IMG/VR virus record: IMGVR_UViG_3300042289_000986
Location: 62,001 to 126,000 of that record
DNA length: 64,000 bases
Reading direction: 5' to 3' (one strand)
Below, one piece after another: positions 3,188 through 36,700 of the stretch; the first letter of the stretch is position 1; every line of letters starts with the position of its first letter. The translations under genes were made by a program, and so were the position numbers. Under the pieces are notes generated by a model. That model saw nothing but the letters and a program-made list of their open reading frames with translations. It was not told the DNA's origin and ran no database searches.

Positions 3188-3196
3188 TTTTGAAAG

Positions 3197-3653
3197 TGGA
3201 GGTGAGGAGAGTTGAACTCCTGTCCAAATAATCTAGGCTAAAAGGTCTACATGTTTGAGTGTCTTTAGCATTTCAGCCACCATACGGTAACGGAGACTTT
3301 AGGCTGCATAGTGACACTAACTGAGTTTATAGTCTGCCTGTAGACATTATCGCAATCTACATACGGTTGATATTTTGTTGTTACGTTAGAACTACCAACA
3401 ATCTAACAACCTCTGCTATCAATGATTCTTTAGAGGATCCAGAATCAAGGTTCTTAGGCGGCTAAGAGCATCTCTTCATCCGCATATGAGGCGAGAACCT
3501 CATCAGCGTTGTTGAAAATACTCTCGGCTTCTGCCAAGAGATCAGAAGTGAAATCTTCTGCATTTAGTTTTTTAATCGATTTTTTACGAGGCCATCGATT
3601 AACCTCGACATGCACTTTTAGTTTCAACTATCTGTCGAAACCAGTACACCCCC
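3197..3653 (-). ncRNA. ssrA: tmRNA (about 457 nt)
   Basis: 5' GGGGGTGTACTGGTTTCGAC; 3' GACAGGAGTTCAACTCTCCTCACCTCCA; acceptor stem with G3.U70; internal tag frame 3561-3454 ending LLAA-stop. Confidence 0.95.
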
Positions 3654-9657: not shown

Positions 9658-9744
9658 GGTGCGATGGCTGAGTGGTCTAAAGCAGGAGTTTACTAAACTC
9701 TCGAAGTTTAATCGCTTCCGTGGGTTCGAATCCTACTCGCACCG
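9658..9744 (+). tRNA. tRNA-Ser(ACT)
   Basis: Acceptor GGTGCGA/TCGCACC, G73, long variable arm, loop TT-ACT-AA. Confidence 0.88.
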
Positions 9745-18689: not shown

Positions 18690-19703
18690 ATGATTAAACA
18701 CGTTGATGTTATTGTCGGTCTTGCTTGGGGGGATGAAGGCAAGGGTAAAATTTCAAGTGCAATGGCCAAAGACTATGATATGGTCTGTCGTTGGAATGGT
18801 GGACCAAATGCTGGTCATACTGTTTATTTGGATGGGAAAAAATACAAAACCCATCTGATTCCTTCTGGTGTTTTTCATGGAAAGAAATCTGTTATCGGTC
18901 CAAACTGTGTTCTGAATATTGAGAAGTTTTTCAAAGAAATTGAATATCTAAAAGAAAATGGATTCGATACATCTTTGGTAAAAGTTCATCCAAATACTCA
19001 TGTGATTACGGATGCACACATTGAATATGATCTGAAACATTTGAAACCAAAACTTGGAACTACAGGTCAAGGTATTGCTCCTTGTTATGCAGACAAAGCA
19101 AATCGTGTTGGTATTCAGGTTAGTAAAGCAAACTTCAATCCCTTAAAAGATTTTATTTGGGATGGAAAATTAGAAGGAAAAATTCTTTGTGAAGGTGCTC
19201 AAAGTATTTGGTTGGATATCAACTACGGTGATTATCCTTATGTGACAAGCTCTGAAACATTTCCTCACAATGCTTGTTCGCTTGGATTTTCACCCAAGAA
19301 AATTCGTGATATTATTGGTGTCGCTAAAATCTATGATACCAAAAGTGGAGTTGATCCGTTGTTTCCAGAATGTCTTTGGAGTGATGTAAAACTAAACAAG
19401 TTAATTGAACTTGGTCAAGAATTTGGTTCTACTACAGGAAGAAAAAGACTTGTGAATTGGTTGAATTTTGGAAGATTAAACAATGCTATTAATCTTTCAG
19501 GTTCAACCAAAGTAATCATCAATAAGTGTGATGTTTTTGAAAAAGTTGGAATCTTCCGAATTAATAATTTTTACGAAACATCTTTGGAAACAAATTCTTT
19601 TGATCAGTTAAAAGACATCATTAAAAAGTCTTTGGTAAATCAAAACATCAATGGATTAAAACCAAATAATATTATTTTTTCTGGTGATCAGACGAATATT
19701 TAA
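18690..19703 (+). CDS. purA: Adenylosuccinate synthetase (short form)
   Basis: GLAWGDEGKGK, GGPNAGHT, GTTGQGI, EGAQ, YPYVTSS, EFGSTTGRKR. Confidence 0.95.
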   Translation: MIKHVDVIVGLAWGDEGKGKISSAMAKDYDMVCRWNGGPNAGHTVYLDGKKYKTHLIPSGVFHGKKSVIGPNCVLNIEKFFKEIEYLKENGFDTSLVKVHPNTHVITDAHIEYDLKHLKPKLGTTGQGIAPCYADKANRVGIQVSKANFNPLKDFIWDGKLEGKILCEGAQSIWLDINYGDYPYVTSSETFPHNACSLGFSPKKIRDIIGVAKIYDTKSGVDPLFPECLWSDVKLNKLIELGQEFGSTTGRKRLVNWLNFGRLNNAINLSGSTKVIINKCDVFEKVGIFRINNFYETSLETNSFDQLKDIIKKSLVNQNINGLKPNNIIFSGDQTNI

Positions 19704-21300: not shown

Positions 21301-21371
21301 TGGCTCGTAGTGTAACGGTAACACCAGAGAATTTGGATCTCTTATTCATAGTTCGAATCTATGCGAGCCAG
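21301..21371 (+). tRNA. tRNA-Gln(TTG)
   Basis: TGGCTCG/CGAGCCA; AGAGA-AT-TTG-GA-TCTCT. Confidence 0.88.
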
Positions 21372-21375
21372 TTTT

Positions 21376-21458
21376 GGGTAAGCGGTAACGTTGGAGAGTT
21401 ACTTCAGACTGTAAATCTGACGCCATTGGCTTAGTAGGTTCGAATCCTTCCTTACCCA
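21376..21458 (+). tRNA. tRNA-Tyr(GTA)
   Basis: TCAGA-CT-GTA-AA-TCTGA; V-arm GCC/GGC. Confidence 0.92.
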
Positions 21459-21475
21459 TTTTCTTTGAAATTTTA

Positions 21476-21566
21476 GCTGGATTAGTGTAACTGGAAGCAC
21501 CGACAGTTTTATAAACTGTGTGCCCTAGATGAGGGCCGAGCGCGGGTTCAATTCCCGCATCCAGCA
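21476..21566 (+). tRNA. tRNA with TAT (Ile) anticodon and long variable arm
   Basis: GCTGGAT/ATCCAGC; ACAGT-TT-TAT-AA-ACTGT; V-arm GCCCT-AGATG-AGGGC; A73. Confidence 0.85.
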
Positions 21567-21572
21567 TTTTTC

Positions 21573-21592
21573 GCACAGTTAGCTCAGTGGTA
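21573..21592 (+). pseudogene. 5' fragment of a tRNA gene, truncated by the HNH gene
   Basis: GCACAGT-TAGCTCAGTGGTA after the usual T-rich spacer, no continuation. Confidence 0.7.
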
Positions 21593-21998
21593 TGTTTAAA
21601 TTCTTAATCCTATATCTTTTCTTATATGTGGATCTTTTAGAATTTTTTCTGTTTCTGCTACAATAAGTGTCTGTCTGTGAATGACAATTTGGACAAAGCA
21701 ATCTAATATTATTAGGATAGTTATTATCGGAATTACCATCAATATGATCTAAATGTAATGATATGTCTTTATTTTTCCAATTTGATATTTCACAAACCTC
21801 ACATTTATATCCTCTTTTAAATTGTAAAAATTTTTTTAAAGTAGCAGCTTGTGAACATTTATTAGATTCTATTTTAGGAATAGTTATATTGTTAAATGTA
21901 TAGTTTCCTTGACAAGTATTGTTACAATACTTTCCAAAACTTTTACTTTCATCGTATTTTATTTCTTTTTTACAGTTTAAACAAAAAGAAGTTTTCAT
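21579..21998 (-). CDS. HNH homing endonuclease
   Basis: CLNC..CNNTC; CEVC..LHLDHIDGN..N...NIRLLCPNCHSQT. Confidence 0.9.
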   Translation of the reverse strand: MKTSFCLNCKKEIKYDESKSFGKYCNNTCQGNYTFNNITIPKIESNKCSQAATLKKFLQFKRGYKCEVCEISNWKNKDISLHLDHIDGNSDNNYPNNIRLLCPNCHSQTDTYCSRNRKNSKRSTYKKRYRIKNLNIPLS

Positions 21999-22004
21999 AT
22001 ATCA

Positions 22005-22048
22005 TATTTATCCGAGCTATTATACATAAATAAGAGGTCGGATAAATA
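22005..22048. repeat. Inverted repeat carrying outward-facing TAAATA boxes
   Basis: TATTTATCCGA ... TCGGATAAATA (11-bp perfect arms). Confidence 0.7.
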
Positions 22049-22093
22049 AAATATAGTTGATTAATAAGATATTTTAATATAATATATAAATAT

Positions 22094-34720: not shown

Positions 34721-36700
34721 TTATTTGATTGGACATGCACCGCCTTCACATTCCAAACCTTGAATAGCATCTTCTCCCATATCAGAAGATTTCATTGTTT
34801 GAATTGGTTTAACTTTAGCTTTATTTTTTTCGTATGTTTCACCATTAATTTCTTCGTATGGTGCTTGTTTGAATCCGTGATTTTGTCTCAACAAAAAGCT
34901 TACAGATTTAATTGAATTTTGATAATTTTCTTCTAACCATTTTTTAAGCTCTGGAAGTTCTTCTTCCGAGTAATATGCGGTAACACTAACTGCATTATCT
35001 GACCAAATAGTTTGAAGTTTTTTAACTGTTTCCAGTTGTTTGATAACTCCCATATCTGCTGCAAAAATTGCACCATCTGGTGTTTCGCACGGAAACTCAA
35101 TAACAACGGTATCATGATTTTCTGAGCCATCAAAATTGATGACATATTCGGTATGATATCCCATATCTCTGCAATATTGAACTAATGGATCATTACTTGC
35201 CATACGAACACGACGAGTATAATATTTTGAATAAGCGGGGTGGATTCCTGGTGTAGCACCACCAAGAAGACTTAATGTTCCACTAGGCTTAATTGTTGTA
35301 AGTTTAATACTACGAGGCCATCCTTTTTGTTTACTCCACTCTTTATCAAATTTTCTCAATTCTTTATAACAATCGTCAAGCCAATCGACTTTATCTAATG
35401 CTTGACAAACACCAGTTACTCCCAAACCAAGACGCATGTTCTTGTGAACAATTTTATTTGTTTCATCGTGAATGAATGGAAGTGCAGCGATTGCTTTTTG
35501 TGTTTTATAAAGCAATCTGGCACAATCAACCAATTCTTCTTTGTTTGAAATATTATTCAAATAAAGTTCTGAGAGATTGCAACACTCATAAGAGGCAAGA
35601 CTAATTTCACCACATGGGTTTGTACCAACTACATTGTCTTCATCGGTTGGATAAAGACTAGAATCCTTCATTGGACCATCTTTAATTCTTCCATATTTTT
35701 GAGAAAGAGGAAGGTTAAAGAAACCATAAGGTTCGCCTTTTGCAAAACCAGTTTCTTTATCTGTTGTATAACCATTTTGCCAGATCTCGTTTGAGATGTG
35801 GGAAAAGTCATCAGCATAAATCGTGTTGTTAGACATTGCTCTCCAGTTAGGAATATTTCCCAATGACCAATTTTTGGCGCGTAAAAAGAGATAATCATCA
35901 GGATCTCCTATAGCAATTTGGGCAGAGCGACGAACATTACCAGAAACAACAATACTTCCAATAATATTACAAATATCTAATACATCGATAGAACGAAGCT
36001 TTTTGCCTTCTCTTGTTTGAAAGATTTTTGCAATTTTGTCAATACCTTCGATTAATATTCCTGCTCCGCTTGCTTGTCCACCGAAACCTTGAATCTTTTC
36101 ACCTGCACCACGAATAAGGATTGTAGAATAATTAAAAGATTTTCCTGTTACATAAAATGCATGAAGAACTCGATCTAAAAGTTCGATCCAGCCTTCACGA
36201 CTATCTGGAATAATAAACTTTGCATCTTTTGTACATTCATGTGTAATCGTTACACCTTTTTTAATTTTAGGAAGTTCGTGAATATCTTCTCTACGAATAG
36301 AAAATCCGACACCACCACCAAGCATTAAATTTTCAAATAAAAACAAAAATGCTTTTGGTTCATTCATAGACACATTCCAACAATTCAATAAAGAATTTGC
36401 TCCAAAACGCTCAACTGTGTTTGTTCCTAATTGCCAAAGCATTCTTCCTGCATAGTTGCAACGCAAGTTGAAAATATGATCAAACAGTCTTTCGGCTTCT
36501 TCTTGTGTATAATCTGCACCTAGTTTTTGTGCTCCGTTGATACAACGTTGAATTGTTTCATGCCACTCTTCTTTTTGTCCATCGTCTTTTAAACGAGCAT
36601 ATGTTCTTTTATAAACAATATAACCAAGTCCATTGAAACCCCAATTAGTTTTTTTGTTAGAATATTTTTTAACAAACGAATCCGAAATAATTTTTTCCAT
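34721..36700 (-). CDS. nrdJ: Class II (adenosylcobalamin) ribonucleotide reductase
   Basis: KRTYAR, NC, GGGVG, NVRRSA, TNPCGE, TIKPSGT, C-terminal CEGGACP. Confidence 0.93.
   Translation of the reverse strand: MEKIISDSFVKKYSNKKTNWGFNGLGYIVYKRTYARLKDDGQKEEWHETIQRCINGAQKLGADYTQEEAERLFDHIFNLRCNYAGRMLWQLGTNTVERFGANSLLNCWNVSMNEPKAFLFLFENLMLGGGVGFSIRREDIHELPKIKKGVTITHECTKDAKFIIPDSREGWIELLDRVLHAFYVTGKSFNYSTILIRGAGEKIQGFGGQASGAGILIEGIDKIAKIFQTREGKKLRSIDVLDICNIIGSIVVSGNVRRSAQIAIGDPDDYLFLRAKNWSLGNIPNWRAMSNNTIYADDFSHISNEIWQNGYTTDKETGFAKGEPYGFFNLPLSQKYGRIKDGPMKDSSLYPTDEDNVVGTNPCGEISLASYECCNLSELYLNNISNKEELVDCARLLYKTQKAIAALPFIHDETNKIVHKNMRLGLGVTGVCQALDKVDWLDDCYKELRKFDKEWSKQKGWPRSIKLTTIKPSGTLSLLGGATPGIHPAYSKYYTRRVRMASNDPLVQYCRDMGYHTEYVINFDGSENHDTVVIEFPCETPDGAIFAADMGVIKQLETVKKLQTIWSDNAVSVTAYYSEEELPELKKWLEENYQNSIKSVSFLLRQNHGFKQAPYEEINGETYEKNKAKVKPIQTMKSSDMGEDAIQGLECEGGACPIK

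What the first reader, a model, noticed from the sequence alone, without database searches (positions are those of the whole stretch)
21476..21566. tRNA with UAU anticodon and a class II long variable arm
Seen: anticodon TAT; 5-bp V-arm stem GCCCT/AGGGC; A73; an extra nucleotide between D and anticodon arms; boxA-like TTCTTTGAAA directly upstream. Known: bacteria normally read AUA with lysidine-modified CAU (TilS); long V-arms belong to Leu, Ser, Tyr and Sec; A73 plus a long arm are LeuRS-type determinants; nematode nev-tRNA-Ile(UAU) with a V-arm is leucylated in vitro. Inference: either a TilS-independent AUA decoder (ATA is common in this genome's AT-rich genes) or a mis-acylated or decoy tRNA.
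Basis: partly seen in the sequence, partly recalled or inferred. Interest (0 to 1): 0.72.

Follow-up and report, generated by a model that had tools for sequence, protein, structure and literature searches.

The report
Phage isoleucine tRNA with two anticodon-like arms
A large uncultured freshwater phage carries a real, conserved tRNA that reads the isoleucine codon AUA, and its unusual extra arm looks like a second isoleucine anticodon arm (GAU), a design not found described in the papers I could search.

Summary
Window 21476-21566 (+) encodes a 91-nt tRNA with anticodon UAU, A73, two nucleotides between the D and anticodon stems, and a 22-nt variable region with a hairpin. It is not an artefact: the same scaffold occurs in 63 other viral contigs (42 distinct sequences). 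Every copy has UAU, and all five helices, including the extra arm, keep pairing through compensatory changes.

The window lies in a complete 211.6-kb T4-like phage (31% G+C, 20 tRNAs, no IleRS- or TilS-type gene). Comparison of codons with related phages shows that ATA interchanges with ATT/ATC, not with Leu, Ser or Tyr codons. AUA therefore means Ile here, and a leucine-charged tRNA of the nematode type is unlikely.

The new point is the extra arm. It has a covarying 4-bp stem and a 7-nt loop, and its central GAU is kept in 40 of 41 sequences. GAU is the anticodon of the major tRNA-Ile. With the UAU arm removed in silico, the remainder is called a class I tRNA-Ile(GAU) with a normal 5-nt variable loop.

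Best reading: a lysidine-independent AUA decoder. Its GAU arm may serve as a handle for IleRS; this part is inferred, not tested. The "boxA-like" motif upstream is not conserved.

The parts
21476..21566 (+). Whole tRNA gene: 91 nt, 7/5 cloverleaf plus an extra arm, A73 at 21566, no encoded CCA
   Evidence: ARAGORN; Rfam RF00005, 50.2 bits; family model R1, 114.9 bits; fold z = -4.3
21485..21500 (+). D arm GTGT-AACTGGAA-GCAC: a 4-bp stem including U13-G22 and an 8-nt loop with G18 G19. This is the class I type and is almost invariant in the family.
   Evidence: Alignments A3 and A4. Pairs 10-25 and 12-23 covary. The arm stays conserved in members found with a probe that did not include it.
21501..21502 (+). 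Two-nucleotide linker C26 G26a between the D and anticodon stems (the canonical linker is 1 nt). Invariant in all members.
   Evidence: Invariant columns in A4, including members found with probes that did not contain it.
21503..21519 (+). Hairpin 1, the anticodon arm: stem ACAGT/ACTGT, loop TTTATAA. Anticodon TAT at 21510-21512; U33 and A37 are invariant.
   Evidence: All five stem pairs covary and the loop U33-U-A-U-A37 is invariant. Every member has TAT, including those found with probes that did not include the anticodon.
21520..21536 (+). Two-nucleotide linker G44 U45 (21520-21521), then hairpin 2, the extra or 'variable' arm (21522-21536). Stem GCCC/GGGC (21522-21525 with 21533-21536); 7-nt loop TAGATGA (21526-21532) with GAT at 21528-21530.
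   Evidence: All four stem pairs covary, with 10 stem variants and 99.4% of cells paired. GAT is kept in 40 of 41 distinct sequences while the flanking loop positions vary.
21537..21541 (+). Five-nucleotide stretch CGAGC between hairpin 2 and the T stem. This is the length of a canonical class I variable loop.
   Evidence: Invariant in members found with the D-arm probe, which did not include it.
21542..21558 (+). T arm GCGGG-TTCAATT-CCCGC
   Evidence: Four of the five pairs covary.
21301..21459 (+). tRNA-Gln(UUG) and tRNA-Tyr(GUA) immediately upstream. With the UAU tRNA they form a Gln-Tyr-Ile block that a close relative lacks.
   Evidence: ARAGORN. The block is absent from G001, whose RNR is 98% identical.
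21460..21475 (+). 16-nt AT-rich spacer containing the 'boxA-like' TTCTTTGAAA
   Evidence: Not conserved upstream of other family members.

Best explanation
This is a working elongator tRNA of a T4-like freshwater phage. It reads the Ile codon AUA with an unmodified-type UAU anticodon, so it does not need lysidine (TilS). It is charged with isoleucine by the host IleRS.

It belongs to a phage set of U34 tRNAs that supply decoders for the A-ending codons of a 31% G+C genome; ATA makes up 2.2% of all codons.

Its core is a five-way junction with two hairpins side by side. Hairpin 1 is a canonical anticodon arm (UAU). Hairpin 2 has a 4-bp stem and a 7-nt loop with an invariant central GAU, so it looks like the anticodon arm of the major tRNA-Ile.

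Proposed mechanism (inferred, about 0.25-0.3 on its own): IleRS enzymes of the E. coli type accept U34 poorly. The GAU arm gives IleRS its preferred anticodon determinants, and the UAU arm does the decoding on the ribosome.

Shown here: the gene is real, conserved and structurally constrained; both loops are under sequence selection; AUA is treated as Ile in these genomes.

Inferred: Ile charging, use on the ribosome, and the role of hairpin 2.
For: (1) Searches confirm the tRNA.

(2) Four different probes found the scaffold in 63 further contigs, giving 42 distinct sequences; alone covers 58 metagenome identifiers. All copies carry TAT.

(3) Covariation on 41 distinct sequences: 98.6% of cells paired, 22 of 25 pairs with changes on both sides, 0 of 500 shuffles as high. 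RNAalifold finds the same fold on its own.

(4) Codon test against 81 related loci. In orthologues 80-99.5% identical, ATA sites align to ATA 70%, ATT/ATC 17%, Leu 1%, Val 8%. TTA sites align to ATA 0.0%. In orthologues 40-80% identical, ATA sites give I 51%, L 15%, V 12%, close to ATT sites at 59%, 12% and 14%.

(5) Nearly all of the phage's tRNAs have U34. The phage has no PF00133 (Ile/Leu/ValRS) or PF01171 (TilS) gene.

(6) Loops of hairpin 2: TAGATGA 20, TAGATGT 6, CAGATTA 5, CTGATTA 4, TAGATTG 3, TAGATAA 1, TAGATTT 1; the one exception is TGCGACGA. There are ten stem variants.

(7) With hairpin 1 deleted in silico, ARAGORN of 41 remainders tRNA-Ile(gat), each with a 1-nt linker at position 26 and a 5-nt variable loop.

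(8) A class I tRNA-Ile(GAU) in a related phage has the anticodon loop CUGAUUA, identical to one variant of the hairpin 2 loop.

(9) A complete 203-kb relative with only five tRNAs still keeps this one.

(10) E. coli IleRS charges a UAU tRNA-Ile poorly unless it carries W905R (PMC3575796).

(11) A metatranscriptome contig spans Tyr, this tRNA and Val with no change inside the tRNA. This is weak evidence, because DNA carry-over is not excluded.
Against: No aminoacylation or expression measurement exists, and the host is unknown.

The codon test shows what AUA means in these genomes. It does not show that this tRNA is the molecule that reads it, and it could miss a low level of Ile-to-Leu ambiguity.

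Geometry is unresolved. An IleRS monomer cannot obviously hold hairpin 2 in its anticodon pocket while the acceptor end sits in the active site, unless the junction re-stacks.

The hairpin 2 loop mostly has A rather than U at the position equivalent to 33, and G or U at the position equivalent to 37. It is therefore not a full copy of an Ile anticodon loop.

Two contigs (L123, and the L071/L214 subtype) have GCGACG (GAC) in the loop instead.

Some relatives manage with a class I tRNA-Ile(UAU) (L129), so the extra arm is not indispensable.

Other tRNAs in these phages (Met, Thr, Asn, Lys) also carry short extra hairpins with no cognate triplet. A general tendency to insert extra arms could explain part of the picture.

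A close relative, G001, lacks the whole Gln-Tyr-Ile block.
Confidence: 0.6

Rival explanations
1. Mis-acylated tRNA of the nev-tRNA type. LeuRS (or SerRS or TyrRS) recognises the long arm and A73 and ignores the anticodon, so AUA is partly read as Leu (or Ser or Tyr). This would act either as a recoding or as a way to damage host translation.
For: The tRNA has a long extra arm and A73 (37 of 41 members). Bacterial LeuRS and SerRS do not read the anticodon (established knowledge). Nematode nev-tRNA-Ile(UAU) is leucylated in vitro (PMC3333845). Related phage loci hold other mismatches between body and anticodon, such as a Leu-like body with a UUG anticodon (L007:1255-1341).
Against: ATA exchanges with ATT/ATC and not with Leu, Ser or Tyr codons. 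The phage's own 1397 ATA codons would be mistranslated. The D arm is of class I type, and 5 nt precede the T stem. Family model R1 scores phage tRNA-Leu at 37-45 bits, no better than tRNA-Gly at 38. The anticodon and the GAU loop are both under strict selection, which aminoacylation by LeuRS or SerRS would not explain.
Confidence: 0.07
2. A tRNA with two decoding heads. The junction switches between two stackings, so that either the UAU arm (reading AUA) or the GAU arm (reading AUU/AUC) reaches the ribosomal A site. One gene would then serve all three Ile codons.
For: Both loops are 7 nt with conserved Ile triplets. The remainder after deleting hairpin 1 is a complete class I tRNA-Ile(GAU) by ARAGORN. 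Four of six complete genomes that carry this tRNA have no separate tRNA-Ile(GAU). One loop variant, CUGAUUA, has U33 and matches a real phage tRNA-Ile(GAU) anticodon loop.
Against: Most hairpin 2 loops lack U33 and have G or U at position 37, and the stem is only 4 bp. An arm inserted at position 26/27 would probably clash with the ribosome (inference from established tRNA-ribosome structures). Two of six complete genomes also encode a class I tRNA-Ile(GAU).
Confidence: 0.05
3. An ordinary Ile AUA decoder whose extra arm has a role unrelated to IleRS. Examples: a shield or decoy against a host nuclease that cuts tRNA, a handle for a U34 or other modification enzyme, or a neutral insertion kept for folding. 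On this view the GAU is a binding motif for some other protein, or a coincidence.
For: Several other tRNAs in related phages carry short extra hairpins (Met, Thr, Asn, Lys), and many tRNA-Leu in these phages lack the long arm (25 distinct sequences). This suggests a general remodelling of tRNA shape in these phages. Loops with GAC exist in two contigs. Phage tRNAs are known to counter host defences that target tRNA (established knowledge).
Against: A conserved central triplet that happens to be the cognate major anticodon has a chance of roughly 1 to 3 in 64. The remainder has exactly the linker lengths of a class I tRNA-Ile(GAU). No candidate partner gene was found.
Confidence: 0.22
4. A tRNA-like RNA that is not used in translation, for example a regulatory element, a primer or a processing signal within the tRNA cluster.
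For: Most allo-tRNA(UAU) species tested were inactive in translation (PMC5389517). The tRNA is absent from a close relative.
Against: It has every hallmark of an elongator tRNA: a 7/5 acceptor-T arrangement, G18 G19, a TTCRATT T loop, U33, A37, A73, and an encoded CCA in 30 of 42 variants. It sits inside tRNA clusters. It is retained in a phage with only five tRNAs.
Confidence: 0.06

Closest known systems
tRNA-Ile2(UAU) of bacteria without tilS (Mycoplasma mobile; Bacillus subtilis tilS-deletion suppressors)
   Same: It has a UAU anticodon, reads AUA without lysidine, and AUA stays Ile (PMC3575796; PMC3919564).
   Different: The known examples are class I tRNAs. In M. mobile the adaptation lies in IleRS (R865) and in the ribosome. 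Here the tRNA is phage-encoded, cannot change the host enzyme, and carries an extra GAU hairpin and an extra linker nucleotide.
Nematode nev-tRNA-Ile(UAU) (Hamashima et al. 2012, PMC3333845)
   Same: It combines a UAU anticodon with a long variable arm.
   Different: nev-tRNAs derive from tRNA-Leu, are leucylated and are eukaryotic. This scaffold has a class I type D arm, shows no particular similarity to tRNA-Leu, and gives no codon evidence for Leu.
allo-tRNA(UAU) (Mukai et al. 2017, PMC5389517)
   Same: These are non-canonical bacterial tRNAs with long arms, among which UAU is a predominant anticodon.
   Different: allo-tRNAs have an 8/4 or 9/3 acceptor-T arrangement, a Ser-type identity, occur in Acidobacteria and were mostly inactive. 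This tRNA is 7/5, with covariation support.
Anticodon-arm mimics that recruit a synthetase (E. coli thrS mRNA operator; viral tRNA-like structures)
   Same: The principle is the same: a hairpin displaying the cognate anticodon triplet is bound by the synthetase (established knowledge). This is only a functional analogy for hairpin 2.
   Different: Those mimics lie in mRNAs or viral genomes, not inside a decoding tRNA. Binding has not been tested here.
Bacterial class II tRNAs (Leu, Ser, Tyr, Sec)
   Same: They have an extra stem-loop between the anticodon and T arms.
   Different: This tRNA has a 4-bp D stem. Five nucleotides rather than 1-3 separate the extra arm from the T stem. The loop sequence is conserved, and the anticodon belongs to a different amino acid.

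Membership tests
tRNA (Rfam RF00005) | Scores above the curated gathering cut-off of the tRNA covariance model | tested here: met
   50.2 bits against a cut-off of 29. ARAGORN also calls it.
TilS-independent tRNA-Ile(UAU) AUA decoders | Genomic anticodon UAU with U33 and A37 | tested here: met
   TAT lies at 21510-21512 and is invariant in 42 distinct family sequences.
TilS-independent tRNA-Ile(UAU) AUA decoders | AUA is decoded as Ile in the genome that carries the tRNA | tested here: met
   In the codon comparison, ATA exchanges with ATT/ATC and not with Leu, Ser or Tyr codons.
TilS-independent tRNA-Ile(UAU) AUA decoders | Aminoacylated by IleRS | not testable with these tools
   Needs a charging assay. 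The structure job with IleRS was not folded.
TilS-independent tRNA-Ile(UAU) AUA decoders | Canonical class I cloverleaf | tested here: not met
   It has an extra 15-nt hairpin and an extra linker nucleotide, both conserved.
nev-tRNA / Leu-derived V-arm tRNA | Body derived from tRNA-Leu (sequence similarity, class II D arm) | tested here: not met
   It has a 4-bp D stem and an 8-nt D loop. Model R1 scores phage tRNA-Leu at 37-45 bits and tRNA-Gly at 38 bits, against 115 for the window copy.
nev-tRNA / Leu-derived V-arm tRNA | Charged with leucine | not testable with these tools
   Indirect evidence only: there is no excess of ATA-Leu codon exchange.
allo-tRNA | 8/4 or 9/3 acceptor/T-stem arrangement | tested here: not met
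   It has a 7-bp acceptor stem and a 5-bp T stem. These 12 pairs are 100% paired, and 11 of them covary.
Bacterial class II tRNA | Long variable arm with a base-paired stem | tested here: met
   The 4-bp stem is 99.4% paired and all four pairs covary.
Bacterial class II tRNA | Anticodon of Leu, Ser, Tyr or Sec | tested here: not met
   The anticodon is UAU in every member.

The most novel reading that the evidence does not exclude
One tRNA carries two cognate anticodon arms. The GAU hairpin acts as a built-in identity element: it lets a host IleRS that discriminates against U34 charge a phage AUA decoder, possibly through re-stacking of a five-way junction. A tRNA solving an aminoacylation problem by displaying a second anticodon would be a new principle of tRNA identity.
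Probability: 0.25. Interest if true: 0.9.

Novelty: new variant of a known kind. Interest (0 to 1): 0.75.

Why it matters
Textbook rules say that bacterial long-arm tRNAs are only Leu, Ser, Tyr and Sec, and that AUA needs lysidine.

This is a widespread, structurally constrained phage tRNA family that breaks both rules while keeping the standard meaning of AUA.

If the GAU arm proves to be an IleRS handle, three things follow:
- It would show a new way to set tRNA identity.
- It would explain how phages can deliver U34 Ile tRNAs into hosts whose IleRS rejects them.
- It would give synthetic biology a natural scaffold for separating synthetase recognition from decoding.

Even if the arm has another role, the family shows that uncultured T4-like phages remodel tRNA shape far more than annotation pipelines assume. 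Related loci also hold tRNA-Leu without the long arm and Met, Thr, Asn and Lys tRNAs with extra arms.

Tried and rejected
- Assembly artefact: rejected. There are 63 independent contigs and a metatranscriptome contig.
- Similarity to GenBank phages: none by megablast or blastn. None to E. coli genomes.
- Host tRNA as the source: a scan of 185,579 species genomes for the extra-arm sequence found one 3.9-kb contig of a lake MAG that holds a three-tRNA cluster (Arg, this tRNA, Leu), probably a mis-binned phage contig.
- boxA-like motif: not conserved.
- 8/4 allo-tRNA reading: rejected by covariation.
- Recoding of ATA: rejected by the codon comparison.
- Phage-encoded IleRS, LeuRS or TilS: none found.
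- Structure prediction of IleRS with the tRNA: the job was not folded and gave no verdict, so it is not evidence either way.
- Whether the phage tRNA(CAU) at genome 48296-48369 is a lysidine-type tRNA-Ile2 or tRNA-Met: blastn against E. coli gave tRNA-Lys as best hit, which is uninformative.
- Pairing of C26-G26a with C62-G63: cannot be tested, because all four positions are invariant.
- Cognate triplets in the extra arms of other long-arm tRNAs (Met, Thr, Asn, Lys): none convincing.
- Host identification: not achieved. The nearest cultured phages are only about 30% identical in DNA polymerase.
- Literature on tRNAs with two anticodon arms, or on class II tRNA-Ile in phages: nothing found.

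Full report
**1. What is at the coordinates**

ARAGORN finds a 91-nt tRNA with anticodon TAT at 21476-21566 (+). Rfam's tRNA model scores it 50.2 bits against a cut-off of 29. The single sequence folds into a cloverleaf plus one extra hairpin (-36.8 kcal/mol, z = -4.3).

Read from the sequence:
- a 7-bp acceptor stem, with A73 at 21566
- D arm GTGT-AACTGGAA-GCAC
- two nucleotides, C and G, between the D and anticodon stems
- anticodon arm ACAGT-TTTATAA-ACTGT, with TAT at 21510-21512
- a 22-nt variable region GT-GCCC-TAGATGA-GGGC-CGAGC
- T arm GCGGG-TTCAATT-CCCGC
- no encoded CCA

**2. Genomic setting**

The window is bases 62001-126000 of a 211,587-bp viral record with direct terminal repeats, estimated to be complete. 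G+C is about 31%.

Pfam shows a T4-like myovirus: tail sheath, T4-type large terminase, family B DNA polymerase, a baseplate hub with lysozyme like T4 gp5, and a class II ribonucleotide reductase. The nearest cultured phages are only about 30% identical in DNA polymerase: Pelagibacter phage Mosig, Caulobacter phage Cr30 and cyanophages. Related sequences come from freshwater metagenomes; one carries a Lake Mendota label and an RNA run is labelled freshwater.

The genome has 20 tRNAs and a tmRNA. Nearly all the tRNAs have U34 and read A-ending codons. ATA accounts for 1397 of 63049 codons, 29% of the Ile box. It is avoided in some genes: 2 of 51 Ile codons in the reductase, and 0 of 29 and 0 of 38 in two other genes. 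The phage has no gene of the Ile/Leu/ValRS type (PF00133) or the TilS type (PF01171).

**3. A conserved family, not an artefact**

Four exact-match probes were run against 2.9 million viral contigs:
- the anticodon arm with the start of the extra arm
- the extra arm alone
- the D arm with the linker
- TTATA, a gap, CGAGC and the T arm

Together they found the scaffold in 63 further contigs, giving 42 distinct sequences. The 61 contigs come from 58 different metagenome identifiers. A scan of the species-genome collection found only one 3.9-kb MAG contig holding a three-tRNA cluster (Arg, this tRNA, Leu), probably a mis-binned phage contig. GenBank phages and E. coli genomes hold nothing similar.

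Every member has TAT, including those found with probes that did not contain the anticodon.

On 41 distinct sequences (A4):
- 98.6% of cells form standard pairs.
- 22 of 25 pairs show changes on both sides.
- No shuffle out of 500 reaches these values, and slid registers fall to about 40% paired.
- RNAalifold predicts the same five helices on its own.

Invariant features:
- the D arm apart from two covarying pairs
- the C-G linker
- U33-U-A-U-A37
- G and A in the extra loop
- CGAGC before the T stem

A73 is present in 37 of 41 sequences, and CCA is encoded in 30 of 42.

A covariance model of the family scores the window copy at 114.9 bits and every other tRNA at 45 bits or less.

A metatranscriptome contig covers tRNA-Tyr, this tRNA without any difference, and the start of tRNA-Val. 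This is only weak evidence of transcription.

**4. What AUA means in these phages**

Eighty loci around the ribonucleotide reductase of related phages (68-100% identical) and locus L020 were compared codon by codon with the window's genome.

In orthologues 80-99.5% identical:

| Site in the window genome | Aligned codon or residue in the relative |
|---|---|
| ATA (76 sites) | ATA 70%, ATT/ATC 17%, Val 8%, Leu 1% |
| TTA | ATA 0.0%, ATT/ATC 2.4% |

In orthologues 40-80% identical:

| Site in the window genome | I | L | V |
|---|---|---|---|
| ATA (179 sites) | 51% | 15% | 12% |
| ATT | 59% | 12% | 14% |

Ser and Tyr are about 1% at ATA sites. ATA therefore behaves as a synonym of ATT/ATC and not as a Leu, Ser or Tyr codon.

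A tRNA that put Leu at AUA would mistranslate about 1400 sites of the phage's own proteome, and it leaves no trace in the substitution pattern. This does not prove which amino acid the tRNA carries, but it makes the mis-acylation reading unlikely.

**5. The body is not of the Leu, Ser or Tyr type**

- The D stem has 4 bp (including U13-G22) and the D loop has 8 nt with A14, A15, G18, G19 and A21. This is the class I pattern.
- The family model gives phage tRNA-Leu 37-45 bits and tRNA-Gly 38 bits.
- Five nucleotides separate the extra arm from the T stem, where class II tRNAs have one to three (established knowledge).
- The acceptor/T arrangement is 7/5, which excludes the allo-tRNA architecture (PMC5389517).

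**6. The extra arm looks like a second Ile anticodon arm**

The extra hairpin has a 4-bp stem that covaries freely. There are ten stem variants: GCCC, TCCC, GCAC, GCGC, TCGC, TCCA, ATCC, CCGG, GTCC, and GCCC paired with GGGA.

It has a 7-nt loop. Counts among the 41 sequences:

| Loop | Count |
|---|---|
| TAGATGA | 20 |
| TAGATGT | 6 |
| CAGATTA | 5 |
| CTGATTA | 4 |
| TAGATTG | 3 |
| TAGATAA | 1 |
| TAGATTT | 1 |
| TGCGACGA (exception) | 1 |

The central GAU is kept in 40 of 41 sequences while its neighbours vary. A very divergent member with degenerate D and T loops keeps it too (L135). GAU is the anticodon of the major tRNA-Ile.

When hairpin 1 and its flanking G26a, G44 and U45 (20 nt) are deleted in silico, ARAGORN of the 41 remainders tRNA-Ile(gat). 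Each remainder has one nucleotide at position 26 and a canonical 5-nt variable loop, CGAGC.

The two anomalies of the 'class II' description are the extra linker nucleotide and the long 3' tail. Both disappear if the molecule is described instead as a class I tRNA-Ile(GAU) body with a UAU anticodon arm inserted between positions 26 and 27. Both descriptions share the same helices and differ only in which hairpin stacks under the D stem.

A class I tRNA-Ile(GAU) of a related complete phage has the anticodon loop CUGAUUA, identical to one variant of the extra loop.

**7. Proposed mechanism**

Shown: the gene is real, both loops are under sequence selection, and AUA means Ile.

From the literature: E. 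coli IleRS does not charge a UAU tRNA-Ile efficiently unless W905 is changed to Arg, whereas M. mobile IleRS has Arg at that site (PMC3575796).

From established knowledge: IleRS reads G34, A35 and U36 as major determinants. Class I synthetases approach the tRNA from the side away from the variable region.

Inference: a phage cannot alter the host IleRS, so it supplies a UAU decoder that also displays GAU on a neighbouring hairpin of similar length. IleRS can then be recruited or can accept it, while hairpin 1, which has a canonical U33 and A37, decodes AUA on the ribosome.

I put the Ile AUA decoder at about 0.6. I put the IleRS-handle role of hairpin 2 at about 0.25-0.3.

Points against the handle idea:
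- The geometry is unresolved.
- The loop mostly has A at the position equivalent to 33, and G or U at the position equivalent to 37.
- Two contigs have GAC loops (L123, and a second scaffold in L071/L214).
- Some relatives use a plain class I tRNA-Ile(UAU) (L129).
- Two of six complete genomes with the family tRNA also have a class I tRNA-Ile(GAU).
- Other tRNAs of these phages carry short extra hairpins without cognate triplets.

**8. Distribution**

The tRNA occurs in different cluster contexts: after Gln-Tyr, after an fMet-like tRNA, and beside Leu, Arg, Met or Lys. It is absent from one close relative whose reductase is 98% identical (G001). It is therefore a mobile part of mosaic tRNA clusters.

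Complete genomes that carry it hold 5, 14, 14, 20, 21 and 27 tRNAs. The phage with only five tRNAs still keeps it.

**9. Comparison with what is known**

In function it works like the lysidine-independent tRNA-Ile(UAU) of M. mobile and of B. subtilis suppressor strains. It fails the class I criterion of that group.

It resembles nev-tRNA-Ile(UAU) only in combining UAU with a long arm. It is not an allo-tRNA.

Searches of the held literature found no description of a 7/5 long-arm tRNA-Ile in phages, or of a tRNA with a second cognate anticodon-like arm. Subscription journals are mostly outside that library.

**10. Verdict**

This is a new variant of a known kind. It contains a specific, testable and potentially new identity mechanism.

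Noticed in passing
window 21571-22090 (tRNA-Val remnant 21573-21592; ORF 21579-21998 on the minus strand): A 520-bp insert lies between this tRNA and tRNA-Val. It starts with the first 20 nt of the tRNA-Val type found in relatives L020 and G001, and it holds a 139-aa HNH endonuclease ORF (Pfam 21.5 bits, at the cut-off). A metatranscriptome contig joins 21570 directly to 22091, so a variant without the insert exists. It looks like a homing-endonuclease cassette that came in together with a replacement tRNA-Val.
   Followed up: partly
window 9658-9744 (+): This tRNA-Ser has anticodon ACT (A34), whereas bacteria normally use GCU for AGY codons. The same gene is present in relatives (L020:380-466, L132:2060-2144, G011, G013), so it is conserved. 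AGT makes up 25% of the phage's Ser codons and AGC 8%.
   Followed up: partly
window 3194-3653 (-): A phage-encoded one-piece tmRNA (Rfam 138 bits) with tag peptide ADEEMLLAA.
   Followed up: no
window 21375-21459 (+): ARAGORN calls this tRNA-Tyr(GTA), but it does not reach Rfam's tRNA gathering score. ARAGORN draws it with a T-A first pair and a T discriminator.
   Followed up: no
related loci, e.g. L014:1281-1356, L126:1498-1573, L128:1501-1576, L137:1501-1576: There are 25 distinct tRNA-Leu genes (anticodons UAA, CAA, UAG, GAG) of class I length, 73-82 nt, without a long variable arm. They often lie beside the long-arm tRNA(UAU).
   Followed up: partly
related loci L003:6799-6885, L116:2223-2306, L160:4540-4625 (Met); L207:3291-3374, L162:10890-10972 (Thr); L116:2860-2943 (Asn); L158:349-435 (Lys): These tRNAs, normally class I, carry short extra hairpins in the variable region, mostly with small stable loops such as GCAA, GUAA or CUUU. 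Remodelling of the variable region seems general in these phages.
   Followed up: partly
L007:1255-1341 and L009:393-478: A class II tRNA with a Leu-like D arm (GGGGGAATTGGTAGACCC) carries the anticodon TTG (Gln codons CAA/CAG). It lies next to the long-arm tRNA(UAU) and is a candidate for a true mismatch between body and anticodon.
   Followed up: no
L071:8065-8154 (same contig as L214) and L123:908-999: A second, rare type of long-arm tRNA(UAU) has the extra loop GCGACG (GAC) instead of GAU. In L071 the D arm is different, the linker at position 26 is 1 nt, and the tail is GAGAT. Only these two contigs were found.
   Followed up: yes
L135:1501-1589 (-) and neighbouring tRNAs L135:2507-2775: A phage (G009) whose tRNAs have degenerate elbows: no GG in the D loop and T loops such as TGCAACT. 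Its tRNA(UAU) still has the GCCC-UAGAUGU-GGGC hairpin.
   Followed up: no
L127:2990-3082 (-): ARAGORN calls a 93-nt tRNA-Ile(tat) here that has no recognisable T loop. It may be a mis-call or another aberrant tRNA.
   Followed up: no
genome 48296-48369 (L025:3296-3369), outside the window: A tRNA(CAU) is conserved in relatives (G013, G014, L019). From memory its D arm and anticodon loop resemble lysidine-type tRNA-Ile2. If that is right, the phage carries two kinds of AUA decoder. The blastn test against E. coli was uninformative.
   Followed up: partly
window 34721-36700 (-); genome 41415-43430 and 191214-192671: ATA use differs sharply between genes. It is almost absent from the class II ribonucleotide reductase (2 of 51 Ile codons) and from two other genes that prefer ATC (0 of 38 and 0 of 29). 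It reaches 76% of Ile codons in the gene at genome 1577-4744.
   Followed up: no
window 18690-19703 (+): A short (337 aa) adenylosuccinate synthetase (PurA, Pfam E = 1e-82) lies within the tRNA region. It is probably an auxiliary metabolic gene.
   Followed up: no
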